From the IMG/VR virus record IMGVR_UViG_3300031951_000001, positions 186,001 through 250,000 of that record: a DNA stretch of 64,000 bases; one strand, given 5' to 3'. Shown here piece after piece: positions 21,733-52,918 of this stretch (position 1 is its first letter; each line of letters begins with the position of its first letter). Both the position numbers and the translations under genes were made by a program. Below the pieces are notes generated by a model. The model was given only the letters and a program-made list of their open reading frames with translations. It had not been told where the DNA came from and did no database searches.

Positions 21733-21761
21733 TTGACAACCTAACCTTCAATATTTATAAT
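21733..21761 (+). promoter_or_regulatory. Consensus sigma70-type promoter TTGACA-N17-TATAAT, overlapped by a TATTTATA motif
   Basis: TTGACA 21733-38, 17-nt spacer, TATAAT 21756-61; TATTTATA at 21752-59; directly upstream of the polymerase gene. Confidence 0.8.
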
Positions 21762-21813
21762 TGATATAAAGGTAAATGTCGTAATTTCGCGGCAGCCAAT
21801 AAACCAATCAATT

Positions 21814-24642
21814 ATGATAAGTCAAGAAGAAATTAAATCGTTTCTAGAAGGAAACGACCCCGAAGAACATATCGTTGCCATAGAATTCGACTATGTTTCC
21901 GATTCTATATTCAAAATCAAAGAAATCCCTGGCAAAGGAAAAGAAATTAAAAAAGATACATTCGTAGCTTTCGCGTGGGTAGGTGACCTACGTGGTCTTA
22001 ACTTTTATCAATCATCAAAGGCCTTACAGAAAGAAGCCATGTCCAAGTACGGGATTATGATTGATAAACTCGAAACGGGGGATAATGACCGTATGGAGGA
22101 AGGTCTGAAGTTTATGGTTAAGTCCTTAAAGGGTTATCGCTCTCTCATTCAGTTTTTCAGAGATGGTGGTGTTGACCCGTGGGGAGAAAGAACCAAAGAC
22201 CTAATAATGATACTACCCCCCACCGAACAGTATCTCATCTCACGAGAAAAAAGATTATTCAAAGGATACGACGAATACAATGACATCACGAGGTTTGTAT
22301 TCGACTTAGAGACAACCGCACTCGAACCCAAAGACGGTCGTATATTCATGATTGGTATCAAGACAAACAAAGGATACCAAAAAGTAATTGAGTGTTCTAA
22401 TGAGGACGAGGAACGTCGTGGTCTTGTAGAATTCTTTAATATCATTGATGAATTAAAACCAAGTATTATAGGAGGTTACAATTCGGCGAACTTCGACTGG
22501 TATTGGATATTCGAGCGTTGTAAAGCTCTGAACCTCGAAATTAAAAGGATTTGTAAAACACTTAACCCAAAATATACAATTAAGGAAAGTGAGAACATGC
22601 TCAAACTTGCCAACGAAGTTGAAAGATACAACCAAGTTGGAATGTGGGGTTATAATGTAATTGACATTATACATTCTGTACGGAGAGCTCAAGCAATCAA
22701 TTCAAGTATCAAGTCTGCGGGTTTGAAATACATTACCCAATATATTGATGCCGAGTCCGAAGACCGAGTTTATATTGACCACACCGAGATTGGTCCGATG
22801 TATTCCAAAAAAGAAGAATATTGGTTAAACATTAAGAACGGAAAATACAAGAAGGCAAATAATCCTGAGTTTGATAACTTGGACGCAAGATTTCCTGGTA
22901 CATACATTAAGACAACAGGTGATGACATTGTGGAGAGATATCTTGACGATGACTTGGAGGAAACATTATTGGTTGACGAAGAATTCAATCAGGGTACATT
23001 CCTTCTCGCTTCACTTGTACCAACAACTTATGAGAGAGTATCCACTATGGGTACAGCTACTTTGTGGAAGATGTTGATGCTTGCGTGGAGTTATAAACAC
23101 AAACTCGCAATACCAAAGAAACAATCAAAGACAGATTTTGTGGGAGGATTGTCACGACTACTGAAAGTAGGATACTCAACCAAAGTATTAAAGCTCGACT
23201 ACTCGTCACTTTATCCTTCAATCCAACTTGTACATGATGTGTTTCCTGATTGTGATATTACAGGAGCGATGAAAGGTATGTTGTCATACTTCCGTAACTC
23301 TCGTATCATGTATAAAAACTTGGCGGCCGAGTGGTATGATAAAGATAAAAAGACATCACTCAAATACGATAGAAAACAGTTACCGATTAAGATTTTCATC
23401 AACTCAATGTTCGGAGCCTTGTCGGCACCACAGGTATTTGCGTGGGGTGATATGTATATGGGAGAACAGATTACATGTACAGGAAGACAATACCTTCGTA
23501 TGATGATTAAGTTCTTTATGAATAAGGGTTATACCCCCCTTGTAATGGATACCGATGGTGTTAACTTCTCAAAACCTGAAGGTGTGGAGGATAGAATTTA
23601 TATTGGTAAGGGTCTAAACTGGAAAGTTAAGGAGGGTAAAGAATATCGTGGTGATGATGCTGACGTTGCCGAGTTTAACGATACATTCATGAGAGGTGAA
23701 ATGGCGTTAGATACTGACGGTACTTGGCCATCTTGTATTAATCTCGCTCGTAAGAACTATGCGGTTATGGATGCGAAGGGTAAAATTAAACTCACGGGTA
23801 ATACAATTAAGTCAAAGAAACTCCCACTTTATATTGAAACGTTTTTGGACAAAGGAGTTAAACAATTACTCGAAGGTAAGGGTCAGGAGTTTATCGAGTG
23901 GTATTATGAATACGTTCAGAAAATTTATGATAAACAAATCCCACTCATGAAAATCGCCCAACGAGCCAAGGTTAAGTTAAGTATTGAGGATTATAGAAAA
24001 CGTTCGAAGGAAAAAACAAAAGCGGGTAATGAGATGTCAAGGATGGCCCACATGGAACTCGCAATTCGTGATAATATTGCGGTGAATCTTGGTGATGTTA
24101 TATATTATGTTAATAACGGTGTGAAAGCGTCTCACGGTGATGTTCAGAAAGTTAATGATAAGATGTCAAAGAAAGAAAAGGATGAGTACAGAGCAAAACA
24201 CGGTAAAGAACCGGTATTAGGTTCTCACATTCAACTTAATTGTTATCGTCTCGACCCAAGTGAGTTAGAAAACAATCCTGATATGACAGGTGATTACAAT
24301 GTGCCGAGAGCGATAGCAACATTTAACAAACGTATCGAACCGTTGTTGGTTGTCTTTAAAGAAGAAGTACGTGACGGTTTGATTGTTGATAATCCCGAGG
24401 ATAGAATGTTCTTTACCAAAGACCAATCAGAATTGATTAATGGATTACCATTTGAGAAGGGAGACCAAGATACGTTGGAAGAAGTTTTGACAATATCTGA
24501 ACCTGAAATGAGGTATTGGGAAAAACGAGGATTACATCCTGATTACATGTACGAACTTGCTTCTGAAGGGTGGAAAGAAAAATTAATCCATTTTGAGACC
24601 ATCGGAGGACAGAACGTACCAATGGTTACCAATGTTAATTAA
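21814..24642 (+). CDS. polB: Family B DNA polymerase with 3'-5' exonuclease domain
   Basis: ExoI FDLETT, ExoII YNSANFD, ExoIII YLDDD, motif A DYSSLYPS, motif B KIFINSMFG, motif C DTDG. Confidence 0.95.
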   Translation: MISQEEIKSFLEGNDPEEHIVAIEFDYVSDSIFKIKEIPGKGKEIKKDTFVAFAWVGDLRGLNFYQSSKALQKEAMSKYGIMIDKLETGDNDRMEEGLKFMVKSLKGYRSLIQFFRDGGVDPWGERTKDLIMILPPTEQYLISREKRLFKGYDEYNDITRFVFDLETTALEPKDGRIFMIGIKTNKGYQKVIECSNEDEERRGLVEFFNIIDELKPSIIGGYNSANFDWYWIFERCKALNLEIKRICKTLNPKYTIKESENMLKLANEVERYNQVGMWGYNVIDIIHSVRRAQAINSSIKSAGLKYITQYIDAESEDRVYIDHTEIGPMYSKKEEYWLNIKNGKYKKANNPEFDNLDARFPGTYIKTTGDDIVERYLDDDLEETLLVDEEFNQGTFLLASLVPTTYERVSTMGTATLWKMLMLAWSYKHKLAIPKKQSKTDFVGGLSRLLKVGYSTKVLKLDYSSLYPSIQLVHDVFPDCDITGAMKGMLSYFRNSRIMYKNLAAEWYDKDKKTSLKYDRKQLPIKIFINSMFGALSAPQVFAWGDMYMGEQITCTGRQYLRMMIKFFMNKGYTPLVMDTDGVNFSKPEGVEDRIYIGKGLNWKVKEGKEYRGDDADVAEFNDTFMRGEMALDTDGTWPSCINLARKNYAVMDAKGKIKLTGNTIKSKKLPLYIETFLDKGVKQLLEGKGQEFIEWYYEYVQKIYDKQIPLMKIAQRAKVKLSIEDYRKRSKEKTKAGNEMSRMAHMELAIRDNIAVNLGDVIYYVNNGVKASHGDVQKVNDKMSKKEKDEYRAKHGKEPVLGSHIQLNCYRLDPSELENNPDMTGDYNVPRAIATFNKRIEPLLVVFKEEVRDGLIVDNPEDRMFFTKDQSELINGLPFEKGDQDTLEEVLTISEPEMRYWEKRGLHPDYMYELASEGWKEKLIHFETIGGQNVPMVTNVN

Positions 24643-24930
24643 TTCTACACAGGCACCTTTTTTCATTTCGATTTCCTCGTAGTATTCATCAATGAGACCC
24701 GAGTTTGTCTTCAATAAAGTATTAGTAAGTGATTTAATAATAAGATGAGTAGTTGTAGTCCTGTCTAAAGTTAGTTGGCAGGATTCAACTTCTCTAACTA
24801 AAATTATATTTTCACCATTTGTGGTATATTCTGACTCGGAGATTGTTTTAATATTTAACTCACTATCAGTCGCAACAGTATATGTTGTTTTATCACCAAC
24901 TATTTTTCTAACGATATTAGATTTCTGCAT
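24583..24930 (-). CDS. Hypothetical protein (probably structural; follows neck gene)
   Basis: 115 aa; starts 2 nt after the neck gene stop; overlaps the polB 3' end by 60 nt. Confidence 0.65.
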   Translation of the reverse strand: MQKSNIVRKIVGDKTTYTVATDSELNIKTISESEYTTNGENIILVREVESCQLTLDRTTTTHLIIKSLTNTLLKTNSGLIDEYYEEIEMKKGACVELINIGNHWYVLSSDGLKMD

Positions 24931-24932
24931 AA

Positions 24933-26054: not shown

Positions 26055-26076
26055 ATTGGTGTTTTATATATAAATA

Positions 26077-27618
26077 TCAACCCAATGTATAAATTAAATT
26101 GTTCTTATCGAATGTGTAATTACCGTCAACAATTTTTGTATCCGAGTTATCAAATACTAAAATACCATCAGGACCACCCTCAAAAATAATCCAATCAGTC
26201 GAATAAACTTTTACTTGTCCTGTATCTAACATTGAAACCAAATTTTCATCGACAACTTTAACCGTTTTATATGGTTTTATTTGAGCGGTATATTCTTCAC
26301 CATCAATAATGATGATACAATCAACACCCATTATCATGTCAGATTTGGCACCTAACTCGCCAATCTTTTTAACATTTTTGTCTCCGAATTTTTCCTTGAG
26401 TTTCTTAACTACTAAATCTTCTCTGGCGTCACCGGCTTTGTTGGTCGAACCTAATATTGCCATGACATTTTGAAATGTGCCTGACTTTGATGAAAAAATT
26501 CTGTCTTTATATTCATCGAGTATTCTAACAAATTTTTTGGTCTCACTAACTTGTTGAGCCGGTGGTAATCCGATTAATTGTAATTCGGGTCTTCTTTCAT
26601 ATCTTAATACTGAATTCAAGTCGTGATATAAAACACAGAACGCATTGTAGTTGGTATTCAGTTTGTTAATTACCGAACGTCCTCTGTTTTCTAAATCAAA
26701 AATACCCGACATAGAACCTTCGGCGTATTCCCCATTCTCATACCAATTATCAGGAAACACTGACTTTAAAATTGACTCGATACCATAACGAAATGTGTTC
26801 TTAACTGCGGGATTGATATTAAAAATCATTCTTATCTCCTCAACTTTTTCTCTCGAACATCTTTCTGACTTACCTTCAGTGATAAGTTTTTTCATAACGG
26901 TGCTCTCGTTGATTTTTGTCTTGAGTTTCATTTCGTATAGTTTATTAACAAATTCCCAATTCACAACTTTCCAAAAGTTTGAAATGTATTCGTCTCGTTT
27001 GTTTCTGTATTTCAAATAATATGCGTGCTCCCAAAGGTCTAATCCAAGTATCGGATATCCACCACCCTTAACAACATTCATTAAGGGGTTGTCTTGGTTT
27101 GGGGTTGTTAAAATCTTTAACGTGTTTCTTTTTGTAAGAACCAACCAAACCCAACCTGAACCAAAACGTTCTTTTGCTTTTTCCTCAAATTGTTTTTTGA
27201 ATTCAACATAACTACCAAAATCACTTTTTATTTTATCTAAAATCTTACCATTAGCTTTTTGTGTTTTTGGCGATAACATCTTCCAAAACAATGCGTGGTT
27301 AAATGCCCCACCGGCATTGTCTCTGACTGTTTTATTGAATCGACTAATTGATTTAACAATTTGTTCTAATTCTAAATCTCCGTAATCTTTTTTTGATAAA
27401 GCTTTGTTTAACTTTTCAACATAACCTTTGTAGTGTTTGTTGTAATGTACATCCATCGTTTCAGAATCGATGAATGATTTTAAGGATGAATAGGCGTAAG
27501 GTAATTTTTCAATACCTATGTTTTTCATTTCGGTGAGTAAAGTTTGACTCGACTCGACCTTTTCTTCTTTCAAAATTGATTTGGTTAAGGTGTCTATTTT
27601 TTTTTCTATGTTCTTCAT
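26077..27618 (-). CDS. sod: Fe/Mn superoxide dismutase fused to a C-terminal PD-(D/E)xK-like domain
   Basis: LPYAYSSL, TMDVHYNKH, NAGGAFNHALFW, FGSGWVWL, NQDNP, DLWEHAYY (all four metal ligands present). About 270 extra C-terminal aa contain GVD...TAQIK. TATTTATA on the minus strand at 27635-27642. Confidence 0.9.
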   Translation of the reverse strand: MKNIEKKIDTLTKSILKEEKVESSQTLLTEMKNIGIEKLPYAYSSLKSFIDSETMDVHYNKHYKGYVEKLNKALSKKDYGDLELEQIVKSISRFNKTVRDNAGGAFNHALFWKMLSPKTQKANGKILDKIKSDFGSYVEFKKQFEEKAKERFGSGWVWLVLTKRNTLKILTTPNQDNPLMNVVKGGGYPILGLDLWEHAYYLKYRNKRDEYISNFWKVVNWEFVNKLYEMKLKTKINESTVMKKLITEGKSERCSREKVEEIRMIFNINPAVKNTFRYGIESILKSVFPDNWYENGEYAEGSMSGIFDLENRGRSVINKLNTNYNAFCVLYHDLNSVLRYERRPELQLIGLPPAQQVSETKKFVRILDEYKDRIFSSKSGTFQNVMAILGSTNKAGDAREDLVVKKLKEKFGDKNVKKIGELGAKSDMIMGVDCIIIIDGEEYTAQIKPYKTVKVVDENLVSMLDTGQVKVYSTDWIIFEGGPDGILVFDNSDTKIVDGNYTFDKNNLIYTLG

Positions 27619-27651: not shown

Positions 27652-29421
27652 TTAGAATTGTCTTACAGAATTTATCTTATTCATTATTTCCTCAACTATG
27701 TCACCGGAATTTATATTATCACCCATCACGGTTTCAATATTTTTCTTCTTGTTATTAACCATATCGTAGATTATTCCTTCGATTGTATTTTCAAATATCG
27801 GATAATAAACGGAAACTGAATTTTTTTGACCGTATCTATAAGCTCTATCTTCAGCTTGTGATAAATCACCTGGCACGAATGCCAAGTCGTTTATGATTAC
27901 CGCTTCTGCGGCGGTTAGGGTAATACCAACACCTGCGGCTTTTAAGTTACCAACGAATACTTTTATCTTTTCGTTGTCTTGAAATTGGTCTACCGCATAT
28001 TGTCTTTGAGCATTACTACAACTACCATCTAAAAATACAGCTTGTTTTCCGAAGTGACTGTAAATTTTATGTAATGTATCTGTAAAGTTTGTGAATATAA
28101 TGACTTTCTTTCCTTGTTCTAAAATATTTTCAGCAATCTCGATTGTGTTATTAACCTTTTCATCGGCAATGACCTGTCTAACTTTCATTAACTTACTAAA
28201 TTGTACGGTCAATGACCCTGATTCTTCTTTTTTGTTGTCATACCAATCATAATAATCACCCATCAATGCTTCGTATTGTTTTGACCTAACACGAAGATAA
28301 ACTGGTGTAATAATCTTGTCAGGTAAATCCAACACTTCTGTCTTCAATCTACGTAAAACTTGTCTTGCTGTTCTATCTCTCAACTCCTCCAAGTTTGATG
28401 CTCCTGTCACATTCCAAACCTTCCTATTACCCGCTCTGAATTGATACCCCTGACAATATCTAATGGCAAATGCCATCCAATTTTGAGCTACAGGACTATC
28501 AATAAGATGTAATAGATTAAAATAATTCATTGGTCGTGATGTCATCGGAGTACCAGTTAATAACCACAACTTATCAACATTCTTACAGATGTGATTAACA
28601 ATCTTTGTTCTTTGAGCTTGAGCATTCTGAACATAGTGGGCTTCATCCAAAATTATCAAATCAAAGTTTGATTGTTTGATTAATGAAGTTTCTTTGTCCT
28701 TTGGGTCATGAAAGTTTTTCAATATGTCATAATTCACAATAACAAAATCATGCTCGGTCGAATATGATTTACCTTCAGAAATAAACACACTTCGGTCTGT
28801 ATAATTCTGAATCTCACGAAGCCAATTGACCTTTAACGTTGCCGGACAGACAATTAAAATCTTTTTGGCTCCCGTTTCTAAAGCCGCAATAATTGTTGAT
28901 GTTGTTTTACCCAAACCCATGTCATCGGCAAGAATAAATCTTTTACTACCTGCCAATTTTTCTATTGCTTCTTTTTGATGTTCGAGTGGAGGACGATGAG
29001 AATACTTTGAATAGTTGATATCGACTTTCTCCATTCTGTGTGACTTAATCAACGCCCCTTTCGGTAACCAAAAATCGTGAATTGTCTCACCTGAAAAAAA
29101 CTTACCCCAAACGTGATAAGCTTTCTCCTTCTCAACCAACAATTTTTCTATCCAACATTCTGTGGGTATCTCCGTATATAATTTTTCATCGGCAATTTTC
29201 TTTGCGAAGTATGGGTCCAAATCAACCCATTTTTTGGCGACCTTTGGTGATGTTTCATGAAAGGTTGTGATATATTCTGATTGAGCTCGGGTGGGGTAAA
29301 ACTTTTTATTATGTTCTTTATTGTATTTTAATTTCAGGATATAGTTGTTTGCCCCCGAATAATTTTCGAGAATGCCCAAAGCTCGTTGCTCAATCAAATT
29401 TGTCGAGGTTGAATTCAACAC
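27652..29421 (-). CDS. SNF2-family (HARP/SMARCAL1-like) helicase/ATPase
   Basis: LADDMGLGKT, DEAH, LTGTP, AAGVGITL, QAEDRAYRYGQ. The true start is likely GTG 29421 or TTG 29418 because the 29466 start overlaps the divergent gene. Confidence 0.9.
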   Translation of the reverse strand: MLNSTSTNLIEQRALGILENYSGANNYILKLKYNKEHNKKFYPTRAQSEYITTFHETSPKVAKKWVDLDPYFAKKIADEKLYTEIPTECWIEKLLVEKEKAYHVWGKFFSGETIHDFWLPKGALIKSHRMEKVDINYSKYSHRPPLEHQKEAIEKLAGSKRFILADDMGLGKTTSTIIAALETGAKKILIVCPATLKVNWLREIQNYTDRSVFISEGKSYSTEHDFVIVNYDILKNFHDPKDKETSLIKQSNFDLIILDEAHYVQNAQAQRTKIVNHICKNVDKLWLLTGTPMTSRPMNYFNLLHLIDSPVAQNWMAFAIRYCQGYQFRAGNRKVWNVTGASNLEELRDRTARQVLRRLKTEVLDLPDKIITPVYLRVRSKQYEALMGDYYDWYDNKKEESGSLTVQFSKLMKVRQVIADEKVNNTIEIAENILEQGKKVIIFTNFTDTLHKIYSHFGKQAVFLDGSCSNAQRQYAVDQFQDNEKIKVFVGNLKAAGVGITLTAAEAVIINDLAFVPGDLSQAEDRAYRYGQKNSVSVYYPIFENTIEGIIYDMVNNKKKNIETVMGDNINSGDIVEEIMNKINSVRQF

Positions 29422-29427
29422 ATTATA

Positions 29428-29456
29428 AAAATAATAAACAATTCGATATTTATCAA
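29428..29456. promoter_or_regulatory. Overlapping divergent promoters: TTGATA-N17-TATTTT (minus, helicase) and TATTTATC (plus, 29447-54, neck gene)
   Basis: Both motifs are read directly in a ~36-nt intergenic gap. Confidence 0.5.
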
Positions 29457-29457: not shown

Positions 29458-29973
29458 ATGGGACAACCGAGAGTACCAATATCAAGGATAGGAAAATTTT
29501 TTGGAGTTGAGGATTTCGACTTGGATATCTCTATGGGTGAGGAATGGTTACACGGTGATATGAATTTCACACTTGTTCTATACCGTGTGGATAGACAAAA
29601 AACCAAAACCGATGATGTATATGGAGAGGCTTTAATGGATGGAATAAAGTTTTTACCACCCGTAGAATTCAAAGCATTTGTACAAATCATGGCCCCTGAA
29701 AACAAATATTTAGGTAACTCAAAGATTGACCAAGTTGAGCCAGGTAACATTAGAATATCGGTGTATCAAAAACAGTTAGATGAACTTGAGATTGATATTA
29801 ATTACGGTGATTACATTGGTTATTATGAAACTGAAAATCGTGTTAGATATTATGTGGTCAACAATGATGGTCGTGTAATTTCTGATAATAAACATACATA
29901 CGCTGGGTACAAGCCATTCTATAGAACAATTATGGCGTCTGCCGTTGTAGATAACGAATTTAGAGGATTATGA
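29458..29973 (+). CDS. Head closure/neck protein (T4 gp14-like)
   Basis: DDVYGE motif and GDYI segment; positioned before the tail terminator and sheath genes. Confidence 0.55.
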   Translation: MGQPRVPISRIGKFFGVEDFDLDISMGEEWLHGDMNFTLVLYRVDRQKTKTDDVYGEALMDGIKFLPPVEFKAFVQIMAPENKYLGNSKIDQVEPGNIRISVYQKQLDELEIDINYGDYIGYYETENRVRYYVVNNDGRVISDNKHTYAGYKPFYRTIMASAVVDNEFRGL

Positions 29974-31352: not shown

Positions 31353-31402
31353 CAATTTATAAATAGTTATCGGTAAGTCAAGAATTTTGGTTTTTTCTTG
31401 AA

Positions 31403-31410
31403 TATTTATC
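31403..31410 (+). promoter_or_regulatory. TATTTATC putative late promoter (sheath)
   Basis: Motif variant 31 nt upstream of the sheath ATG. Confidence 0.55.
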
Positions 31411-39526: not shown

Positions 39527-39557
39527 CAAGTCATCTATTTATAATAAAGTTTAATTG

Positions 39558-44586: not shown

Positions 44587-44913
44587 ATGGCCGGCAGACA
44601 ATATTTTAATAGGTATAGTAATTTTGTAATTAACGGACAACAAACTGTTGTTCCTTATGTAAATCTGCCGAGTAAATCAACAGATAAAAGATTTATATAT
44701 AAGATAGGTCAATCAAGATTAGATAAGATGTCACAACAATATTATGGTACTCCATATTTCGGATGGTTGATATTAGCAGCAAACCCAATTTATGGAGGTC
44801 AAGAATGGAATATTGCTGACGGGTCTATATTGACTATTCCGTTTCCTTTAGTAGCTTCGTTACAAGACTATAAAAACGCTTTAGACAATCACTTCTTCTA
44901 CTATGGTAGGTAA
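44587..44913 (+). CDS. LysM-like baseplate wedge protein (gp53-like)
   Basis: RLDKMSQQYYGTPYFGWLILAANP...LTIP. Confidence 0.8.
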   Translation: MAGRQYFNRYSNFVINGQQTVVPYVNLPSKSTDKRFIYKIGQSRLDKMSQQYYGTPYFGWLILAANPIYGGQEWNIADGSILTIPFPLVASLQDYKNALDNHFFYYGR

Positions 44914-47900
44914 TAACGAAAATATATTAACGGAATTTGATTATAACAACATTACCATAGTTGACCCAAATAAAGTAGTTGACGCTCAAGGTAAAGTTAA
45001 AGAAAGATTTGTGAACCAAGAAGACTTGGTTTATTATGTTAATTTGGAATGTAAAATGCTCCCAAGAACAAAACTAGCTTTGGGAGTTGCTAACAATGAT
45101 TCACTACAAACTATATCGGTCGCTTCGATAAATTTTTTGAAACCTGGTGGTAAAACATTTTTAGATAATTCTTATACCGACGAGATAACAGGAGAAAATT
45201 CAGTAAAAGGCGAAGGTGTTAACCAACCAAAAAAGACGGCAATTTCAAACCCAAATAAGAGTGACGATTTTTATATTAGACAAACAATAACATCAGGTGG
45301 AAAACAAGGGTCTACTGATAATGGGTTATTGGGGGTAAGAAATATAACTGTAAAGTTAGATACTTCATTCTTACCAATTATTACAGTAGAGCTTATTGAT
45401 GTTAAAGGCAGAGCATTATTTGAAGGTGGAAACAATTCTCCATACGCCGCGTTTTTTAATCTACCATACCCCAAATTCTTTTTAACCCTCAAAGGTTATT
45501 ACGGTAAGGCAATTCAATTAGAATTAATGTTACAAAGCTTCAATTCTCGTTTTGATGCTGGAACAAGTAATTTTGAAATATCATTAGTTTTTTACACTTA
45601 CAAATATACAATGTTGTCCGAAATATCGATGGGTATGTTGTTAGCGACCCCTCATATGTATAAATCTAGTGTTCAGGTTGCGGCATTGACAAGTGGTGGA
45701 GGAGCGACAACTCCTGTCAATCAAAGTTTTGCGGAAATTGGGTATGAAAAAATTAAAGAAATGTATTCAGAATATAAATCTAAAGGATTAATTCCTGATG
45801 ATTTTCCTGAATTAACTTTAATACAATTACAATATAGACTTGAGAACTTTATAAAAAACATTTTAGATAACTTTACTAAAGTTAATATGAAGCCTTTGGA
45901 TGACCTAGAGTTATATCAAAAGACTATCAATGAATATATAAGGGATGTTTATACGGCTCAAGGAGAAAAAGCGGGGTCTTGGTTTAACAAGTATATGGAT
46001 ACCAAAGCGCCATTCGTATTGGCAAATCAATTCAAGACCAAAATATATACGTTTAAAGGTAATTTAGATGCTGAAAAAAAACAAGCGGCGATTACAGAGT
46101 TAAAGTCTTTGATATCTAGTTATAATGAGAAACTAAAGACTAATAACACACTTGGGGATAAAGGGTCTTATACTATAGATAATAAGACCATACCGGCATC
46201 AATACCCGTTAAAATAACTTATGATAAAACATTTTTAAGAACATTCACGTCTGAAAATGAAATAAATTTTGAAGAAACGTTTAAGTTAATAAACGGTGTT
46301 CCTGCGACAGGAGATACACAAATTAACGAATTAAAGGCTGACTTTCAGAAAAGAAATTTATTTAATGCTTCTGATACAACAGTTAAAGACGGACAACCTG
46401 AAATAACCTATCAATATTTTGCATTTGATAACAACACCAATGAAATTATTAATAATGTTTCAAATTTTTTAGACCCGACTTTTTTTGGTGAGATAGACCA
46501 AATACAAAAAAAATTAAAAGCTTTTAGAATTCAAATAGAAGAAGACCTAACTAAAGCTCTATCTAATTTATTACAAAATTCAAATAACGGTATTGGGTTT
46601 GTCCCAAATATAAGGAATGTTTTGGCGGTTGTTTTTGCAAGTGGAGAAGCTTTCATAAGATTGATGGATGATGTTCACAGAGAGGCGTGGAATCAAAGGG
46701 ATGCTCCCGCAAGAAAAAATGCAATTTTTAATAAACAAATTGAAAGTGCGTCACAGGACGCTTTGGACCCGGGGTTAAATAATGAAAATCCTGTTTATCC
46801 ATGGCCTCAGTTTTTAGTAGAAACCGCAGGGGAAAACGGACAAGAAAAATATGAAATAAAATACCCTGGAGACAGCGATGTTATACAACAAACTCAAGGA
46901 TTTCAATATGATGTTTGGCCTGAAATAGAATTTGAAGAAGAATTTATAAAAGGATACATAGAAAGAACTTTACCACCACAAAACCCGAGCACAAATTTTA
47001 ATGAACTAACCGAACCAAAGAGAATTTCGTTCAATGCTATGGAATTCCCAATAAACAACATTGTTTTTTCGAATAAAGAAGAGATTAAGTTTTTCTTTGA
47101 AATTTATGAAAGAATAAATTTTGTAACATATTATTCAAAACTTTCGAGATGTTCTAACTCTATTGCGGAATCAGATAAAATAATCGATTTGTTGGCAGAT
47201 GCTGAGGCAACAAATATGGTTACAAGTTTGGGGGATACAAATCCGTTCCTACTTGACAAGTTAAAAAATTATGCGTTCAACTCTCAAAATTATTTATCCA
47301 CACTCAGGGGATTTTCGAATGATGGAACGGGACAAAGTTGGCAGAATTATTTGAGAGGAATTTACAATACAAATTATATAAGAAATTTAATATCAAATTC
47401 TGAGTTTGAATTTATGGATTTGAATACATTACTTGCACCAGTATCAGAACCGCTTGTAAGTTTAGAAAAAGAACAAGATATTATTGATTATTTGGCTCAA
47501 GCATCGCTCTCAAATGTTTTTGATGTTACTGATATATATCCTTTCATAAGTAACGCTTGGTCTAAAAGTGGGTTGGCGAATGGTAAAAATGTGGCCGACG
47601 CTAAACAAGCGTTTACCACCGACAAAATACTGACATTCAATAAAACTAAAAAAGTCATAACGAATTTTTTGGATGCGACAAGTCCCGAAGAAAAAAGAAT
47701 AGTAACTAACTTTATATATAAGACCAATAACGTACCCAACATTACTAACGAAAATATAAAAAGTTTTTACGAAGGAAGAACACCCAAGAAACAACTTGTT
47801 ACTGAAGGTAATATTACTTATTCAGGTTATAATGGGCTGTTAACAAGTAGTCAAACTACCTCAATGTTTAACACTCCATTCTTTATAAATTCAATTTCGG

Positions 47901-50900
47901 AAGGAGTTGAAAAGTTTAGAAATTTTGATAAACATCCATATAAAGTCCCCGCGTATCTTTTTCTAAATTCATTGCCCTTACCTACATTAAGGGAGAAATA
48001 TCAAACATTTGAGTCATCGACTGACGGAGGTGTTTTTAGTAAACCCCTTGACTATATATTTGCTACATTAAAAAAGTTTGGTGCAATCCACAGAGTACCA
48101 TATCCTTGGATTTTAAAGTTAGGTTCTATATGGCATAGATATAAAGAATACACCGATAAAGGTATAGACATACTTGACGGTTCTTGGAAAAACTTTGATT
48201 CAACCCGCAGTTTTGACCCATTTGGTTCTAACCCCTCAAGGAATTACGGATTAATTTTGAATGGTTCTCCATTCGACATTGTACTACAAAAAGATACGGT
48301 ATTTGGTACCGAAACATCTTCATTAATTAACACTGGATTTTATCCTAAACTTATTAATGATTTTAACGTATTCTATCAAGGATATAATATTATAGACACA
48401 AGTACTGAAATTAAAGGTACTTGCACATCCGCTGGAAACATATTAACCGTACTAACTGTAAATCATAATTCATTAACTACTGGATTTATTTTACAAGGAA
48501 ACGGATTAAACTCGGCTCAAATATTGTCACAAACAGATGGAATACCTGGCGGACCAGGCACTTATCAAATAAGCACTTCACAAAATGTGACCAATATAAG
48601 TTTTACAGTAGTAAATGCGTTTAACACACCATACAGTGACCAATCGATACAGGACTCATTTTTAAAAGGATTAAGTATAAACTATTCACAAGACTCTGTC
48701 ATAGATTTGGCGGAAGGTTTTGATGACGAGAACCCACAGAGAGACTTAAGAATTATAACTTGGAGTGTTTTAGTTGACGATAAAAATAGAACAAACCAAT
48801 TTATTATACCATCACAAGGGTCAACCTTCAATCAAACCAAAGTGGAATGTTTTGAAAACGGTAAAATTAAAAAAGAAGTTAATAATAATAAATCTATGTT
48901 TAATGGGTCCGTTAGAATGTTTTGGGCGGCACCTCATTATGGATATTTTGATTTAGACAATTTATTAAAACCATCACCTGAAGAATATCTAAAAACAATT
49001 TTTATAAATCAGGAAGAACAAAATCATTTTACATTAAATTCAAAACCAATTTATACCAAAATAAGTGAAATTTTTTCAGTATTTGAAAAAGAAATTTTAG
49101 ATAAATTTGAAGAAGAGTTCTTGAATTTTTCAGTATGTAAGTATGATTTTGTAGATAGTGGTTTGATAAAACCGATGGCGATGACTAATAGTTACGCCCA
49201 AGCAAGTAATCCGGGAACTACTGGAACGACTGGGGACACCGCGGCAACACAACAAACAGATTTAGAATCGAGTTTAACATCGACACTCAAAAACTTTCAG
49301 ACACTTTTCACAAACATGATGACTGTCGTTAAATTGACCGGAACAACGGGGGACCAATTGATAACAGATGTTCAAAATAAACAGACATCAGTTATTGCAA
49401 ATACACTTACAAAGTTCTTGACATATGATGCTGCGTTCAAATTCGGTAACCCATCTAACTATAATAAAAAATTATTTTATTCTTTTACACCTTCAATAAT
49501 AGAAGACCCTTTTACTTGGGAAAGTTATAAAGAAAAAACACCAAACGCATTACCTGTTGACGGAGGAACTACTACCCTCAGTGATTCTAAATTAAATTAC
49601 CCTGACGCTTGGAAAGCATTAGAAACTTATGTTGGTAAGTCAGATATTTCTAGTCTAACATATTCGGATAATGGGTCATATATTACGGATTTCTTTATTG
49701 ATTTAAATGTTGCTTTTACTGACAATAATGTTAAAAATTTATACCCAATTATAAAAATTTACGCTTCACAAAAACTAGCTCAATTTCAAGTAAATTCAAC
49801 ACCACCAACTTTACCATCAACTCAACCATACGAAGGGGCGTTAATTGAAACCTATGAATTATCTGGAGGGTCAAAAGTTTTAATTTTTAAACAAGGACCA
49901 AGAAAATTCGCGGTACTTGTTAATCAGAATGAAGAGACACTATATATAGGAGAAAAAATATCCATATCAGCAAATCCTGACAGCCAAGGAATTGTCAATG
50001 AAGCGTTACAGGCGTACTATGGTAATCTCGCAGAGTCACCGGAAGTTATTAATATAATTAAAAGTCCGGCACCACAATTTCCCGCAGTACCAGACCCTGT
50101 TGGTAAATGGAGTAAAACAACATTGTCAAACTCATTGGGAGAATTTGTTAGAAATACCGATGACTTCCAAAACAAAATAATAGATAGTTTCTTTACTAAA
50201 ATTAGAAAAAAACTACCCGATATCAGTTTAAAGTCAGAGGTTATTAATCAATCGGCTCTTGAGGGACCACAGAGTAAAGTTGATTTATGGGAAACATTCA
50301 AAGCGATTAATGATAAATGGATTGCCGGTAATGACTTTAAACAAAAAACATTATTTGAAGACATTCTATTATTAGATAGAGCTAGTAGAAATATAGGTGA
50401 TGTTGTTCTTTGTGACATTTATAAATTAAGAAATCAACTTATGACCATTGACCCAACAAACAATATGTTGGGTTTTATAACCACTATTCTTGTTGAGAAT
50501 AATTTTGTGGTAATGAACATACCATCATATGTTAATTTTTATAATGTTCAAGAAGCTCAGAAAAACGCAAAACCAAGATTGGATAGTACTTCAGATTTTG
50601 CTAATAATTTGTTTGGTACATTTTTGAATGTTGACTACCGAGACTCTAGTGCTAAAATGGTGTGTTTTTATGGTGGCAAACCAAGTGAGATTGTTGATAT
50701 AAAAGATAATGTGGATTTTAGATTTAGAGATGATGCGTTTGAAATCACTAAAGCGTCAAGTAATCCATTAGCAGAAAATCAAATTGGTAAAACCGATTGG
50801 GATAAATCAAATAAGGTGGTTGGCTTTAGTGTAGATATCGGACCTCAAAATCAATCAATATTTTATGGATTTAATATTAATCAAGGTAATAGCCAGAGTA

Positions 50901-51901
50901 CCGCAGAAGCTCTCCAAGTCCTAAATCAGATGGCAAACCAAGGAGGGAATAGGGCAGTGGCAACTCAAAACCTATCCCTATATAATTTGTATAAAAACAG
51001 AAGTTATACGTGTACCGTAAGTTTATTAGGCAATGCCATGATACAACCAACAATGTATTTCAATCTTAGGCACGTACCAATGTTTAGTGGTCCATATATG
51101 ATTACAAAGGTTACTCATACTGTAAATCCCGGTAGTTTCGAGACCATATTGGAGGCGGTAAGACAACCGACCGCGTCTTTACCTAAAATAGATAACTTCT
51201 TACAGATATTAAAAACAAATCTTTTAAATTCTGTTATTGCTGAAAGTAATAGACAAAAGGAGGCGATAAACAATGAGGCTAAAAAGGCCGAAAATGTTAA
51301 AGCTCAACAGAAACAATTAAATGATTTTGTTAATACAAATCCTTCTAATACTGCATCGGCTAACCAAACCTGCTCAGCTTCAACTAATTTTGTAGAATTT
51401 ACTTATAAAGCTGCGGTTAAACAGACACTTACAACAAATCAAATGGTTGGGAAAGTAAAATCTTTGGTTGGGGCAACTACGATTTCAGAAAAAGATAAAT
51501 TAAATATGTGTGTGTTTGCAGCGGCTTATATTGCATCAGGAACACAAACAGGATTTCAGGCAAATAATAATAACTTTATCGGATTGGATTTACAACAGAA
51601 TTGGAATAAAAATTATATGGAGACTAGATTTTTCTGTTCTTCGAGTAACGTGCCATTTGCATCATTTGCGAATGCGGATGACTCCATCAAATACTTGGTT
51701 CAAAGATGGAAAGATAGAATGTATCAAGTTCAACAAATTGATGCAAAATTAATTACTAAATTTTACATTTTAAATTTTGCGGCTACCAATACTGGAACTG
51801 GAAGAGAGGATATATATAATTCTTACGACCCAGCACTATTAAGTAATATTGAAACAGAGGTGCAAAACGCAATTAACTTGTTTAATTCCTCAAATGGATA
51901 A
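44903..51901 (+). CDS. Large baseplate hub protein (gp27/VgrG-like halves with long insertions, C-terminal glucosaminidase-like domain)
   Basis: N-terminal ITVELIDVKG...FFLTLKGYYG; C-terminal YTCTVSLLGNAMIQPTMYFNL...GPYMITKVTH; follows the gp53-like gene. Confidence 0.65.
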   Translation: MVGNNENILTEFDYNNITIVDPNKVVDAQGKVKERFVNQEDLVYYVNLECKMLPRTKLALGVANNDSLQTISVASINFLKPGGKTFLDNSYTDEITGENSVKGEGVNQPKKTAISNPNKSDDFYIRQTITSGGKQGSTDNGLLGVRNITVKLDTSFLPIITVELIDVKGRALFEGGNNSPYAAFFNLPYPKFFLTLKGYYGKAIQLELMLQSFNSRFDAGTSNFEISLVFYTYKYTMLSEISMGMLLATPHMYKSSVQVAALTSGGGATTPVNQSFAEIGYEKIKEMYSEYKSKGLIPDDFPELTLIQLQYRLENFIKNILDNFTKVNMKPLDDLELYQKTINEYIRDVYTAQGEKAGSWFNKYMDTKAPFVLANQFKTKIYTFKGNLDAEKKQAAITELKSLISSYNEKLKTNNTLGDKGSYTIDNKTIPASIPVKITYDKTFLRTFTSENEINFEETFKLINGVPATGDTQINELKADFQKRNLFNASDTTVKDGQPEITYQYFAFDNNTNEIINNVSNFLDPTFFGEIDQIQKKLKAFRIQIEEDLTKALSNLLQNSNNGIGFVPNIRNVLAVVFASGEAFIRLMDDVHREAWNQRDAPARKNAIFNKQIESASQDALDPGLNNENPVYPWPQFLVETAGENGQEKYEIKYPGDSDVIQQTQGFQYDVWPEIEFEEEFIKGYIERTLPPQNPSTNFNELTEPKRISFNAMEFPINNIVFSNKEEIKFFFEIYERINFVTYYSKLSRCSNSIAESDKIIDLLADAEATNMVTSLGDTNPFLLDKLKNYAFNSQNYLSTLRGFSNDGTGQSWQNYLRGIYNTNYIRNLISNSEFEFMDLNTLLAPVSEPLVSLEKEQDIIDYLAQASLSNVFDVTDIYPFISNAWSKSGLANGKNVADAKQAFTTDKILTFNKTKKVITNFLDATSPEEKRIVTNFIYKTNNVPNITNENIKSFYEGRTPKKQLVTEGNITYSGYNGLLTSSQTTSMFNTPFFINSISEGVEKFRNFDKHPYKVPAYLFLNSLPLPTLREKYQTFESSTDGGVFSKPLDYIFATLKKFGAIHRVPYPWILKLGSIWHRYKEYTDKGIDILDGSWKNFDSTRSFDPFGSNPSRNYGLILNGSPFDIVLQKDTVFGTETSSLINTGFYPKLINDFNVFYQGYNIIDTSTEIKGTCTSAGNILTVLTVNHNSLTTGFILQGNGLNSAQILSQTDGIPGGPGTYQISTSQNVTNISFTVVNAFNTPYSDQSIQDSFLKGLSINYSQDSVIDLAEGFDDENPQRDLRIITWSVLVDDKNRTNQFIIPSQGSTFNQTKVECFENGKIKKEVNNNKSMFNGSVRMFWAAPHYGYFDLDNLLKPSPEEYLKTIFINQEEQNHFTLNSKPIYTKISEIFSVFEKEILDKFEEEFLNFSVCKYDFVDSGLIKPMAMTNSYAQASNPGTTGTTGDTAATQQTDLESSLTSTLKNFQTLFTNMMTVVKLTGTTGDQLITDVQNKQTSVIANTLTKFLTYDAAFKFGNPSNYNKKLFYSFTPSIIEDPFTWESYKEKTPNALPVDGGTTTLSDSKLNYPDAWKALETYVGKSDISSLTYSDNGSYITDFFIDLNVAFTDNNVKNLYPIIKIYASQKLAQFQVNSTPPTLPSTQPYEGALIETYELSGGSKVLIFKQGPRKFAVLVNQNEETLYIGEKISISANPDSQGIVNEALQAYYGNLAESPEVINIIKSPAPQFPAVPDPVGKWSKTTLSNSLGEFVRNTDDFQNKIIDSFFTKIRKKLPDISLKSEVINQSALEGPQSKVDLWETFKAINDKWIAGNDFKQKTLFEDILLLDRASRNIGDVVLCDIYKLRNQLMTIDPTNNMLGFITTILVENNFVVMNIPSYVNFYNVQEAQKNAKPRLDSTSDFANNLFGTFLNVDYRDSSAKMVCFYGGKPSEIVDIKDNVDFRFRDDAFEITKASSNPLAENQIGKTDWDKSNKVVGFSVDIGPQNQSIFYGFNINQGNSQSTAEALQVLNQMANQGGNRAVATQNLSLYNLYKNRSYTCTVSLLGNAMIQPTMYFNLRHVPMFSGPYMITKVTHTVNPGSFETILEAVRQPTASLPKIDNFLQILKTNLLNSVIAESNRQKEAINNEAKKAENVKAQQKQLNDFVNTNPSNTASANQTCSASTNFVEFTYKAAVKQTLTTNQMVGKVKSLVGATTISEKDKLNMCVFAAAYIASGTQTGFQANNNNFIGLDLQQNWNKNYMETRFFCSSSNVPFASFANADDSIKYLVQRWKDRMYQVQQIDAKLITKFYILNFAATNTGTGREDIYNSYDPALLSNIETEVQNAINLFNSSNG

Positions 51902-51939
51902 TTTTTCTATATTGAATAATATTTATAAATAAAAATACT

Positions 51940-52164
51940 ATGAACACAAAAGAAGTTTTGGATAGATACTTGGGTAAGAATACCCGTATCACCGAAAAAG
52001 AAACAGGTAATGGTTACAAAGAAGTTTGTGATTTGGATACAGGAGAATGTTATACTTTGAGAATGAAAGATGGGTTGATTGAAAGAGTAGATAACACGAT
52101 GAAACAAAATAAAAAAATCCAAGTCGAAACAATGACTGGTGTTAAACAACTATTAAACGGTTAA
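51940..52164 (+). CDS. Hypothetical protein (74 aa)
   Basis: ORF with VCDLDTGECY; preceded by TATTTATA at 51920-27. Confidence 0.65.
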   Translation: MNTKEVLDRYLGKNTRITEKETGNGYKEVCDLDTGECYTLRMKDGLIERVDNTMKQNKKIQVETMTGVKQLLNG

Positions 52165-52168
52165 AAAA

Positions 52169-52861
52169 ATGTCCATAGATAACAAAATTTTAGAAGAAAT
52201 TCAGAGATATAAGAATATTAATCAATATATCACTGAACAAGAAGTGCCACCGGTTCCCGAAGACCCGGCAGCAGCGTTACCACCCCCACCTGATGCGGGT
52301 GCCGCATTACCTCCTCCACCAGGAGCTCCTGCCCCTGACGCAGGAGCTGCACCACCTCCATCACCACCAGCTGCGGGAGCTGAACCACAACCTGTAGATG
52401 TTGCAACTGACCCTGATGTTGAAAAGGTTGGTGATGAAAAGGAGAAAAGAGAAGAATTAGAAATAACTGACTTGGTACAATCACAACAAAATGTTGAGAA
52501 AAAACAAGAAGAGTATTTCGAAAATTTATTTAAACACCTCGAAGATTTAGAATCAAAACTTGGTAATATGGATTCAATTGTTAGTAAGTTGAATGACCTT
52601 GAAGCCAAAGTTGAAAAATACAGACCAAAAACTCCTGAAGAAAAATTGGAGTTAAGAAGTTTAGATTCAGGACCATTCAATCAAAAATTATCTGAATTTT
52701 TTGAGGACAAACAAGGAGACCTTGAAAAAGCGGGTAAGAATGAGTATGTTTTAACTTCGGATGAGGTTGAAGGATTTTCACCAAACGAAATCAAAAAAAG
52801 TTTTAGAAACTTTGATGATGAAAATGAGGATGATATACAAGACTTCAAAGAAATTAGATAA
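52169..52861 (+). CDS. Pro/Ala-rich acidic coiled-coil protein (possible scaffold/internal head protein)
   Basis: N-terminal ILEE/ITEQ, a disordered PPPP/A region, then a coiled coil. Confidence 0.6.
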   Translation: MSIDNKILEEIQRYKNINQYITEQEVPPVPEDPAAALPPPPDAGAALPPPPGAPAPDAGAAPPPSPPAAGAEPQPVDVATDPDVEKVGDEKEKREELEITDLVQSQQNVEKKQEEYFENLFKHLEDLESKLGNMDSIVSKLNDLEAKVEKYRPKTPEEKLELRSLDSGPFNQKLSEFFEDKQGDLEKAGKNEYVLTSDEVEGFSPNEIKKSFRNFDDENEDDIQDFKEIR

Positions 52862-52863
52862 TA

Positions 52864-52885
52864 AAAAGGGACTTCGGTCCCTTTT
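52864..52885. terminator. Bidirectional intrinsic terminator with cUUCGg tetraloop
   Basis: aaaagggac-ttcg-gtccctttt. Confidence 0.85.
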
Positions 52886-52889
52886 ACAT

Positions 52890-52918
52890 TTGACTACACT
52901 ACGGCTGACACTTATATT
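52890..52918 (+). promoter_or_regulatory. Sigma70-type promoter TTGACT-N17-TATATT for the replication operon
   Basis: -35 at 52890-95, 17-nt spacer, -10 at 52913-18; immediately after the terminator. Confidence 0.75.

What the first reader, a model, noticed from the sequence alone, without database searches (positions are those of the whole stretch)
21733..52918. Canonical sigma70 promoters on replication genes despite Bacteroidota-like translation signals
A perfect TTGACA-N17-TATAAT precedes polB, TTGACT-N17-TATATT precedes the SSB-recA operon, and TTGATA-N17-TATTTT precedes the SNF2 helicase. Leaders are A/T-rich with no Shine-Dalgarno, as in Bacteroidota, whose primary sigma uses TTTG/TAnnTTTG instead. 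Inference: either a phage-encoded sigma70 creates an orthogonal middle-promoter class, or the host is not Bacteroidota.
Basis: partly seen in the sequence, partly recalled or inferred. Interest (0 to 1): 0.6.

Follow-up and report, generated by a model that had tools for sequence, protein, structure and literature searches.

The report
Conserved bipartite promoters of a Bacteroidota jumbo phage
The three sigma70-looking sites are real, evolutionarily conserved promoters of replication genes in a 322-kb freshwater jumbo phage. They fit the promoter geometry of Bacteroidota as well as that of E. coli, and the phage carries its own Bacteroidota-type primary sigma factor, so nothing here contradicts a Bacteroidota host.

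Summary
All three sites exist at the stated coordinates. Generic sigma70-like matches are not enriched in the window or the genome. However, footprinting against distinct related phage contigs shows each site is conserved: TTGA(C/T)-N17-TAnnnTT in 54/54 (polB; spacer 17 in 53, 16 in one), 63/63 (gp32 SSB) and 40/41 (SNF2).

The invariant bases are T-12, A-11, T-7 and T-6, with TTG 20 nt upstream of T-12.

The window lies in a 322-kb T4-like myophage. No RNA polymerase subunit genes were detected and Shine-Dalgarno motifs are essentially absent. It has one 266-aa sigma, collinear with Bacteroidota RpoD and sharing its region 2.4 and 4.2 signatures.

The genome shows three promoter grammars:
- Canonical TAHHTTTG, mostly leaderless, on early-region genes including the sigma operon.
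- A phage-wide -10-only motif, nATATTTAT(A).
- The bipartite class on replication genes.

Which sigma reads which class is inferred, not shown.

In passing, I found a covarying two-helix RNA in the polB leader, a candidate translational operator.

The parts
21732..21738 (+). polB promoter upstream element TTTGACA. It matches both -35 TTGACA and the Bacteroidota -33 TTTG.
   Evidence: TTGA(C/T) is invariant in 54/54 distinct relatives.
21751..21763 (+). polB promoter downstream element ATATTTATAATTG. It contains the phage-wide motif ATATTTAT (21751-21758), TATAAT (21756-21761) and TATAATTG (21756-21763), which matches TAnnTTTG at 7 of 8. The predicted start is at A 21768/21769.
   Evidence: The start position is inferred from the 4-5 nt rule in PMC6847099.
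21769..21806 (+). Structured polB 5' leader. Outer helix GGT 21771-21773 pairs with ACC 21803-21805. Inner helix GTCGT 21778-21782 pairs with GCGGC 21789-21793. The flanks AAGGTAAA and AGCnAATA are conserved. It is a candidate translational operator.
   Evidence: 99.8% of cells paired, 6 of 8 pairs with compensatory changes, 0/500 shuffles reach the observed score. No Rfam match. Unique in the genome.
21814..24642 (+). Family B DNA polymerase.
   Evidence: Pfam DNA_pol_B and DNA_pol_B_exo1.
29451..29456 (-). SNF2 promoter -35-like TTGATA. It is the reverse complement of the 3' part of the divergent promoter ATATTTATCAA.
   Evidence: TTGATAAATA is kept in 40/41 relatives.
29427..29433 (-). SNF2 promoter -10-like TATTTTT (TAnnnTT).
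   Evidence: TAnnnT lies at exactly 17 nt in 40/40 relatives. The -10 reads TATATTT, TATTTTT or TATTATT.
27652..29421 (-). SNF2-family helicase. The start is probably GTG 29421 or TTG 29418.
   Evidence: Pfam SNF2-rel_dom and Helicase_C; sequence read.
29446..29453 (+). Phage-wide motif ATATTTAT, 4 nt before the ATG (29458) of the divergent ORF 29458-29973. It is placed back to back with the SNF2 promoter.
52864..52885 (.). Hairpin AAAAGGGACTTCGGTCCCTTTT just upstream of the gp32 promoter. It is terminator-like and sets the boundary of the unit.
   Evidence: Equivalent hairpins occur in relatives.
52889..52895 (+). gp32 promoter upstream element TTTGACT.
   Evidence: TTGA is invariant and C follows in 62/63 relatives.
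52902..52911 (+). Conserved spacer CGGCTGACAC inside the gp32 promoter. It may be an operator site.
   Evidence: Present in most of the 63 relatives. Its function is not tested.
52913..52920 (+). gp32 promoter downstream element TATATTTA. It matches TATAAT at 5/6 and TAnnTTTG at 7/8.
52945..53793 (+). gp32-like single-stranded DNA binding protein.
   Evidence: Pfam gp32.
53804..53829 (+). Intrinsic-terminator-like hairpin with a T run after gp32. It separates gp32 from the small ORF and the RecA unit.
31402..31409 (+). Example of the phage-wide -10-only motif ATATTTAT before the tail sheath gene (ATG 31442). Other copies lie at 35951-35958, 51919-51926, 56553-56560 and 61407-61414 on the + strand, and at 26070-26077 on the - strand.

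Best explanation
The three sites are genuine promoters of a bipartite class, TTGA(C/T)(A/T) - 17 bp - TAnnnTT. They drive polB, the gp32-like SSB and the SNF2 helicase of a 322-kb T4-like jumbo myophage whose host is most likely a freshwater member of the Bacteroidota.

The phage has no detectable RNA polymerase genes of its own, so transcription depends on the host core enzyme bound to a sigmaA-type factor. That factor is the host's sigmaA, the phage's own 266-aa sigmaA homologue, or both.

The promoters are a strong-upstream-element version of the Bacteroidota promoter TTG-N19/20-TAnnTTTG. A full TTGAC box compensates for a -7 element that has lost T-8 and often G-5.

They coexist with two other grammars in the same genome:
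- Canonical TAHHTTTG promoters, many placed 4 nt before the ATG (leaderless). They sit on small genes of the early region and on the operon that holds the sigma gene.
- A phage-specific -10-only motif, nATATTTAT(A), before most other genes, structural genes included.

Inferred cascade: host sigmaA fires the canonical promoters and so makes the phage sigma. The phage sigma differs from the host consensus mainly in region 1.2 and then serves the nATATTTAT class. The bipartite replication promoters can be used by either.

Shown: the sites, their conservation, the three grammars, and the nature of the sigma. Inferred: the host phylum, start sites, timing, and which sigma reads which class.
For: Conservation of all three promoters in relatives, at fixed 17-nt spacing amid variable flanks and spacers.

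Same geometry as host-type promoters. Among 43 TAHHTTTG sites near starts, 16 have TTG at 19-20 nt upstream of T-12. The three sites have it at 20.

The F. johnsoniae -7 element has T-12, A-11, T-8, T-7, T-6 and G-5 nearly invariant, a weak -33 element, and a start 4-5 nt downstream (PMC6847099).

The sigma gene:
- The only Sigma70_r2 hit in the genome.
- Regions 1.2, 2 and 4 are present.
- 40-44% identity and end-to-end collinearity with 285-294-aa Bacteroidota RpoD.
- Shared strings NLRFV.VAKQYQNQGL, FISYAVWW.(K/R)QSILQ and LT(K/R)ERVRQIKEKA.
- phmmer gives 175-196 bits against all 80 Bacteroidota RpoD, above every solved sigma of other phyla (162 or less).
- More than 80% identical across over 100 phage relatives.

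Sigma operon promoter. It reads TTTG-N19-TATCTTTG in this genome. In 42/48 distinct relatives a TAHHTTTG lies within 45 nt of that ORF's start, and 31 of those have TTG at 18-21 nt.

No Rpb2_6 or Rpb1_2 match in the genome.

Phage-wide motif. TATTTAT occurs 123 times against 14.8 expected upstream of starts. There is no information at -35 and an A 4-5 nt downstream of the motif.

No Shine-Dalgarno and A-rich leaders. DUF6576 is found only in B. thetaiotaomicron among the controls.

Group 2 jumbo phages are described as lacking RNA polymerase genes and carrying RpoD-like sigmas (PMC7824862).
Against: - No transcription start site, timing or in vitro data. The metatranscriptome material was contigs only and gives no 5' ends.
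- The host is inferred, not shown. The nearest isolated phages by tail sheath and polB are cyanophages and Salinibacter phages at 24-31% identity. SOD identity to Bacteroidota (up to 52%) is not discriminating.
- The retrieval of cellular sigma relatives was seeded by Bacteroidota-typical peptides, so the sample is biased.
- The strong conservation of AC in TTGAC goes beyond what is reported for host -33 elements. This leaves room for a phage-specific reader.
- My gene calls are crude (ATG-only, greedy longest ORFs), which affects the counts near starts.
Confidence: 0.7

Rival explanations
1. One reading: the phage sigma creates a separate, orthogonal promoter class on replication genes that the host sigma cannot read.
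For: - A phage sigma exists and is strongly conserved.
- The TTGAC box is conserved more fully than the weak -33 element reported for F. johnsoniae.
- The sigma has K instead of R at the first residue of the region 4.2 recognition string (LTKERVRQ vs LTRERVRQ) and an altered region 1.2.
- The -7 element of these promoters often lacks G-5.
Against: - The recognition helices of regions 2.4 and 4.2 are almost identical to host-type RpoD.
- The geometry equals that of the canonical host-type promoters in the same genome.
- Other TTGAC-type sites head non-replication genes, a dehydrogenase and an HNH endonuclease.
- The much larger phage-specific class is the -10-only nATATTTAT motif, which is the better candidate target for a phage sigma.
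Confidence: 0.18
2. One reading: the host is not a Bacteroidota member but, for example, a cyanobacterium with canonical sigma70-type promoters and low Shine-Dalgarno use.
For: - The best isolated-phage matches for the tail sheath and polB include Microcystis, Nostoc and Anabaena phages.
- A Microcystis jumbo phage encodes an rpoD at 37% identity.
- The habitat is freshwater.
Against: - The sigma scores 175-196 bits against Bacteroidota RpoD but 135-139 bits against cyanobacterial SigA structures.
- 43 TAHHTTTG promoters with G-5, a Bacteroidota hallmark, include the conserved sigma operon promoter.
- DUF6576 is found only in B. thetaiotaomicron among the 14 controls.
- Shine-Dalgarno motifs fall below random expectation.
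- T-6 is invariant in the three promoters.
Confidence: 0.08
3. The matches are chance products of an A+T-rich genome that overlap the real phage motif ATATTTAT. Only the -10 part is functional.
For: - Sigma70-like sites are not enriched overall.
- The polB TATAAT overlaps ATATTTAT.
- The SNF2 TTGATA is the reverse complement of the neighbouring promoter.
- The 111 TATTTAT sites show no -35 signal.
Against: The TTGA(C/T) box and the 17-nt spacing are kept in 157 of 158 distinct relatives across the three genes, while spacers and flanks vary.
Confidence: 0.04

Closest known systems
Bacteroidota sigmaA promoters (-33 TTTG / -7 TAnnTTTG; sigma ABfr type)
   Same: TTG lies 19-20 nt upstream of T-12. 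T-12, A-11, T-7 and T-6 are invariant. The start is expected 4-5 nt after the element. Leaders lack Shine-Dalgarno. The phage sigma shares the compact architecture without region 1.1 and the region 2.4 and 4.2 strings.
   Different: T-8 is variable and G-5 is often A. The upstream element is a full, strongly conserved TTGAC rather than a weak TTG. In F. johnsoniae the -33 element is barely visible (PMC6847099).
E. coli-type sigma70 promoters (TTGACA-N17-TATAAT)
   Same: Matches are 12/12, 10/12 and 9/12, with a 17-nt spacer and A-11 and T-7 conserved.
   Different: The family consensus is TAtanTT with an invariant T-6 and rarely A at -8. Genome-wide there is no enrichment of sigma70-like pairs.
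T4 transcription programme (early sigma70 promoters, MotA/AsiA middle, gp55 late TATAAATA)
   Same: The replication and tail modules are T4-like: gp32, RecA/UvsX-like, DnaB-like helicase, polB, sheath, tube and baseplate. There are several promoter grammars, including a -10-only class before structural genes.
   Different: No gp55 or gp45 homologue was found by single-sequence search. The -10-only motif is nATATTTAT, not TATAAATA. A full RpoD-like sigma is present instead.
Group 2 jumbo phages with RpoD-like sigma factors (Iyer et al. 2021, PMC7824862)
   Same: Family B polymerase, no RNA polymerase genes, and a phage-encoded sigma close to cellular RpoD. The group includes phages of Bacteroidota.
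   Different: The promoter grammars read by such sigmas have not been described in what I read. Membership of this phage in a named lineage was not tested.
T4/RB69 gp43 translational operator
   Same: A small hairpin-containing element in the 5' leader of the phage's own family B polymerase gene, and unique to that gene.
   Different: The sequence and architecture differ: two helices, conserved internal loops, a variable apical loop, and a position at the very 5' end about 10 nt before the A-rich stretch that precedes the ATG. Binding by the polymerase is untested.

Membership tests
sigma70-type bipartite promoter | -35-like hexamer related to TTGACA | tested here: met
   TTGACA, TTGACT and TTGATA. 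TTGA(C/T) is kept in 157/158 relatives.
sigma70-type bipartite promoter | Spacer of 17 +/- 1 bp to a -10 hexamer with A-11 and T-7 | tested here: met
   Spacer 17 in 156 of the 157 relatives that carry the box.
sigma70-type bipartite promoter | Transcription starts about 7 nt downstream of the -10 hexamer | not testable with these tools
   Only assembled contigs of metatranscriptomes were available.
Bacteroidota sigmaA promoter (TTTG / TAnnTTTG) | T-12, A-11, T-7 and T-6 conserved | tested here: met
   Invariant or nearly so in polB and gp32 relatives. All SNF2 -10 elements read TAnnnTT.
Bacteroidota sigmaA promoter (TTTG / TAnnTTTG) | T-8 and G-5 conserved | tested here: not met
   At -8, polB relatives have T 32, C 14, A 8 and gp32 relatives have C 28, T 21, A 14. 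At -5, polB relatives have A 43, G 7, T 4 and gp32 relatives have G 28, A 20, T 15. In the window, polB has A-8 and G-5, and gp32 has T-8 and A-5.
Bacteroidota sigmaA promoter (TTTG / TAnnTTTG) | TTG or TTTG about 19-21 nt upstream of the -7 element | tested here: met
   20 nt in all three sites. The same peak (19-20 nt) is seen in the genome's canonical TAHHTTTG sites.
Primary-type (group 1/2) sigma70 family factor of the Bacteroidota sigmaA kind | Regions 1.2, 2 and 4 present, no region 1.1, compact length | tested here: met
   Pfam Sigma70_r1_2, r2 and r4. The 266-aa protein is collinear with 285-294-aa RpoD.
Primary-type (group 1/2) sigma70 family factor of the Bacteroidota sigmaA kind | Lineage-typical residues in regions 2.1-2.4 and 4.2 | tested here: met
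   VAKQYQNQGL, FISYAVWW.(K/R)QSILQ and LT(K/R)ERVRQIKEKA are shared with the 80% consensus of 80 Bacteroidota RpoD.
Primary-type (group 1/2) sigma70 family factor of the Bacteroidota sigmaA kind | Complete region 3 | tested here: inconclusive
   No Sigma70_r3 Pfam hit, and about 21 residues fewer than RpoD between regions 2.4 and 4.
T4-type late transcription (gp55/gp33/gp45 with TATAAATA) | gp55 and gp45 homologues in the genome | tested here: inconclusive
   A single-sequence search with T4 gp55 found nothing. T4 gp45 gave only E = 0.036. These proteins diverge fast, so absence is not shown.
T4-type late transcription (gp55/gp33/gp45 with TATAAATA) | Late promoter TATAAATA at -10 without a -35 element | tested here: not met
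   The -10-only motif here is nATATTTAT(A) in the sense orientation.
Phage multisubunit RNA polymerase (phiKZ/AR9 type) | beta/beta'-like genes | tested here: not met
   No Rpb2_6 or Rpb1_2 match at E <= 1. Very divergent subunits could escape Pfam.
gp43-type translational operator | Conserved structured element in the polymerase's own leader | tested here: met
gp43-type translational operator | Bound by the polymerase, with repression of translation | not testable with these tools
   Needs binding and reporter assays.

The most novel reading that the evidence does not exclude
The phage sigmaA paralogue has a shifted specificity, reading nATATTTAT (A-5, T-4, no need for T-12 or a -35 element) instead of TAHHTTTG. 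The shift would come through its altered region 1.2. This would split transcription into three parts:
- a host-read early set, which includes the sigma operon;
- a phage-sigma-read bulk set;
- a dual-use bipartite set on replication genes.

In addition, polB would be autoregulated through a new leader RNA.
Probability: 0.3. Interest if true: 0.6.

Novelty: new member of a known kind. Interest (0 to 1): 0.45.

Why it matters
Promoter grammars of phages that infect Bacteroidota are almost undescribed, and this phage group is large: several hundred related contigs in IMG/VR from fresh waters. The analysis gives three things.
- A usable three-class promoter map for the group.
- A demonstration that a sigma70 look-alike is compatible with Bacteroidota transcription.
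- A testable cascade built around a phage-borne sigmaA copy.

The polB leader RNA is a clean new candidate cis-regulator. For the original claim, the outcome is mostly deflationary: there is no conflict between the promoters and the translation signals.

Tried and rejected
- **Generic sigma70 scans and shuffles.** No enrichment. On that basis I first took the SNF2 site for chance, or for the mirror image of the neighbouring promoter. Footprinting overturned this.
- **Extended box CATTTGAC as a regulon marker.** Only the polB and gp32 sites share it, and other TTGAC sites head unrelated genes.
- **Phage RNA polymerase.** Not found.
- **T4 gp55 and gp45.** Not found by single-sequence search, which is inconclusive.
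- **Host from nearest isolated phages.** Ambiguous: cyanophages and Salinibacter phages at low identity.
- **Host from SOD.** 45-52% identity to many Bacteroidota is not discriminating, and I did not run other phyla.
- **Large word search with the sigma.** The 120 hits listed were all phage orthologues.
- **RNA evidence.** Four freshwater or river metatranscriptome runs hold short contigs over gp32 and RecA of this phage or close kin. Contigs give no 5' ends, and one runs through the promoter region.
- **Rfam.** Nothing for the polB leader.
- **Moraphage paper (PMC12619734).** Read for context only. Membership was not tested.

Full report
**Setting.** The window is bases 186001-250000 of a 322,372-bp virus record rated complete, with 34% G+C. 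The window holds T4-like tail genes: sheath, tube and baseplate. It also holds a T4-like replication module:
- family B polymerase;
- gp32-like SSB;
- RecA-like protein;
- 5'-3' exonuclease;
- DnaB-like helicase;
- ribonucleotide reductase.

An SNF2 helicase and a Fe/Mn superoxide dismutase fusion are also present. No RNA polymerase beta or beta' domain was detected in the genome. This matches the 'group 2' jumbo phages described by Iyer et al., which lack a polymerase and carry RpoD-like sigma factors (PMC7824862).

**The observation.** All three patterns are at the stated coordinates. As consensus matches they carry little weight. Sigma70-like pairs are no more frequent than in shuffles of the window. 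The same holds in the sense-strand upstream regions of all 350 crude ORF calls. Only the 12/12 polB site stands out there (1 observed, 0.03 expected).

**Footprinting.** I fetched related contigs from IMG/VR with the polB, gp32 and SNF2 proteins and compared the distinct upstream regions.
- For polB, 54 of 54 have TTGA(C/T), then TAnnnT. The spacer is 17 nt in 53 and 16 nt in one.
- For gp32, 63 of 63 have the same, all with a 17-nt spacer.
- For SNF2, 40 of 41 keep TTGATAAATA. TAnnnT is at spacer 17 in 40 of 40, against 9, 1 and 2 at spacers 14, 19 and 20. There are 13 different spacer sequences.

Flanks and spacers vary freely, except for a conserved CGGCTGACAC inside the gp32 spacer. The three promoters are therefore real and bipartite. 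The family consensus is TTGA(C/T)(A/T)-N17-T A t a n T T (a/g), with T-12, A-11, T-7 and T-6 invariant.

**Why this is not in conflict with Bacteroidota.**
- In F. johnsoniae the -7 element has T-12, A-11, T-8, T-7, T-6 and G-5 nearly invariant. The -33 element is weak, and the start lies 4-5 nt after the element (PMC6847099).
- The window's polB promoter reads TTTG-N20-TATAATTG and the gp32 promoter reads TTTG-N20-TATATTTA. Each has a perfect TTTG and 7 of 8 positions of TAnnTTTG.
- The invariant T-6 lies outside the TATAAT hexamer and belongs to the Bacteroidota element.
- TTGACA-N17-TATAAT and TTG-N20-TA... describe the same geometry.

**Other promoter grammars in the same genome.** A k-mer comparison of upstream regions with the whole genome gives one dominant motif, (n)ATATTTAT(A).
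- TATTTAT occurs 123 times against 14.8 expected.
- 111 copies lie within 60 nt of a start on the sense strand. They are bimodally placed, 11-13 or 21-25 nt before the ATG.
- There is no information at -35. An A lies 4-5 nt after the motif, where a start would be.
- It precedes nearly every gene of the window, giant structural ORFs included.
- It is part of the polB -10 region.
- Its copy before the divergent ORF 29458-29973 is, read backwards, the SNF2 '-35'. That locus is therefore a back-to-back promoter pair.

A second class is the canonical host-type TAHHTTTG.
- 43 sites lie within 60 nt of a start.
- 41 of them are in the small-gene region at genome 300-322 kb plus 1-130 kb.
- 16 have TTG at 19-20 nt upstream of T-12.
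- The modal distance from T-12 to the ATG is 12 nt, which implies leaderless mRNAs.

The nATATTTAT class shows no such TTG peak.

**The sigma factor.** The genome has one sigma70-family gene, of 266 aa, at genome 301298-302098.
- It has regions 1.2, 2 and 4.
- It aligns end to end with 285-294-aa RpoD of many Bacteroidota at 40-44% identity.
- It shares their typical strings in regions 2.1-2.4 and 4.2.
- By phmmer, all 80 Bacteroidota RpoD score 175-196 bits. This is above every solved sigma of other phyla: 162 for C. difficile, 155 for B. subtilis, 139 for a cyanobacterium and 127 for E. coli.
- It differs from the host consensus chiefly in region 1.2 (YYLKDIRK against KYLQEIGK) and by a shorter region 3.
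- It is more than 80% identical across over 100 phage relatives.

The ORF that overlaps its start carries DUF6576. Among 14 control genomes this domain is found only in B. thetaiotaomicron. That ORF is preceded by a perfect TTTG-N19-TATCTTTG. In 42 of 48 distinct relatives the same ORF has a TAHHTTTG within 45 nt, and 31 of those have TTG at 18-21 nt. The sigma operon thus sits behind a conserved host-type promoter.

**Translation signals.** GGAG, GAGG or AGGA occur at -18..-4 in 8 of 350 ORFs, against 24.5 expected from random 15-mers. G is 5-10% at -4..-13. A is 50-57% at -10..-14 and 50% at -3.

**Interpretation.** The best reading is given under Best explanation: host core enzyme plus a sigmaA-type factor. 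The bipartite replication promoters are a strong-upstream-box variant of the Bacteroidota promoter. A cascade is likely, in which host sigmaA fires the canonical promoters, including that of the phage sigma. Assigning the nATATTTAT class to the phage sigma is inference. It rests on two points: the motif departs from the host element at -12, -5 and -4, and the sigma's region 1.2 differs from the host consensus. Region 1.2 contacts the discriminator in known holoenzyme structures (general knowledge). No timing data exist.

**Host.** A Bacteroidota host is favoured by four lines of evidence: the sigma, the TAHHTTTG class, DUF6576 and the lack of Shine-Dalgarno. Against this, the nearest isolated phages for the sheath and polB are cyanophages and Salinibacter phages at 24-31% identity. 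The SOD comparison is uninformative. Runs that hold parts of the locus are from lakes and rivers.

**Side finding.** The polB leader holds a two-helix RNA.
- In 54 sequences, 99.8% of cells pair, against 76% in shuffles and 25-63% when the partners are slid.
- 6 of 8 pairs show compensatory changes.
- The covariation score is 0.77 against 0.30 in shuffles, and none of 500 shuffles reaches it.
- It begins at the predicted 5' end of the mRNA, has no Rfam match and is unique in the genome.

By analogy with T4 and RB69 gp43 (general knowledge), it may be an autogenous translational operator. This is untested.

**Limits.** Gene calls are my own crude ones (ATG-only, greedy longest ORFs). The shuffles preserve mononucleotide composition only. 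The cellular sigma relatives were retrieved with Bacteroidota-typical peptide seeds.

Noticed in passing
window 21769-21806 (+): Covarying two-helix RNA in the polB 5' leader, conserved in 54 relatives. It has no Rfam match and is unique in the genome. It is a candidate translational operator.
   Followed up: yes
window 52902-52911 (+): The spacer of the gp32 promoter keeps CGGCTGACAC in most relatives although spacers normally drift. It may be a binding site for a regulator. It partly repeats the TTGAC box.
   Followed up: partly
window 52921-52944 (+): The gp32 leader keeps TAAACAAT and TTAAA-type A/U-rich repeats in relatives. This is reminiscent of the unstructured operator through which T4 gp32 represses its own mRNA (general knowledge).
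   Followed up: no
genome 1-130 kb and 300-322 kb (outside the window), e.g. genome 20231, 78576, 92624: Many small genes have TAT(A/C)TTTG followed by 4 nt and the ATG (for example TATATTTGTCAAATG). This implies leaderless mRNAs from canonical Bacteroidota promoters. Leaderless mRNAs are reported as rare in Flavobacterium hosts (5.5% in PMC9723704).
   Followed up: partly
window 53804-54081: A strong terminator hairpin follows gp32. After it comes an unannotated small ORF (53857-54081, about 74 aa) whose end overlaps the RecA start codon at 54070.
   Followed up: partly
window 26077-27618 (-): A Fe/Mn superoxide dismutase domain (residues about 37-226) is fused to about 290 further residues with no family match.
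   Followed up: no
window 3388-14505, 14579-18820, 39555-44585, 44903-51901 (+): Giant ORFs of 3705, 1413, 1676 and 2332 aa. The 1413-aa ORF has a reprolysin-like metallopeptidase domain. The neighbouring 958-aa ORF (18853-21729) ends in a Thr/Pro-rich repeat coded by ACC/CCA runs just before the polB promoter.
   Followed up: no
genome 49556-49651 and 301179-301292 (outside the window): Two copies of DUF6576, a domain otherwise seen only in B. thetaiotaomicron among the control genomes. One copy lies in the ORF translationally coupled to the sigma gene.
   Followed up: partly
window 969-3341 (+): Fusion of a TylF-type O-methyltransferase with an HtrL/YibB-like domain, which suggests sugar or surface modification.
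   Followed up: no
window 51800-57700: Short contigs of this phage or close relatives occur in freshwater and river metatranscriptome libraries from several studies. Identities range from 88 to over 99%.
   Followed up: partly
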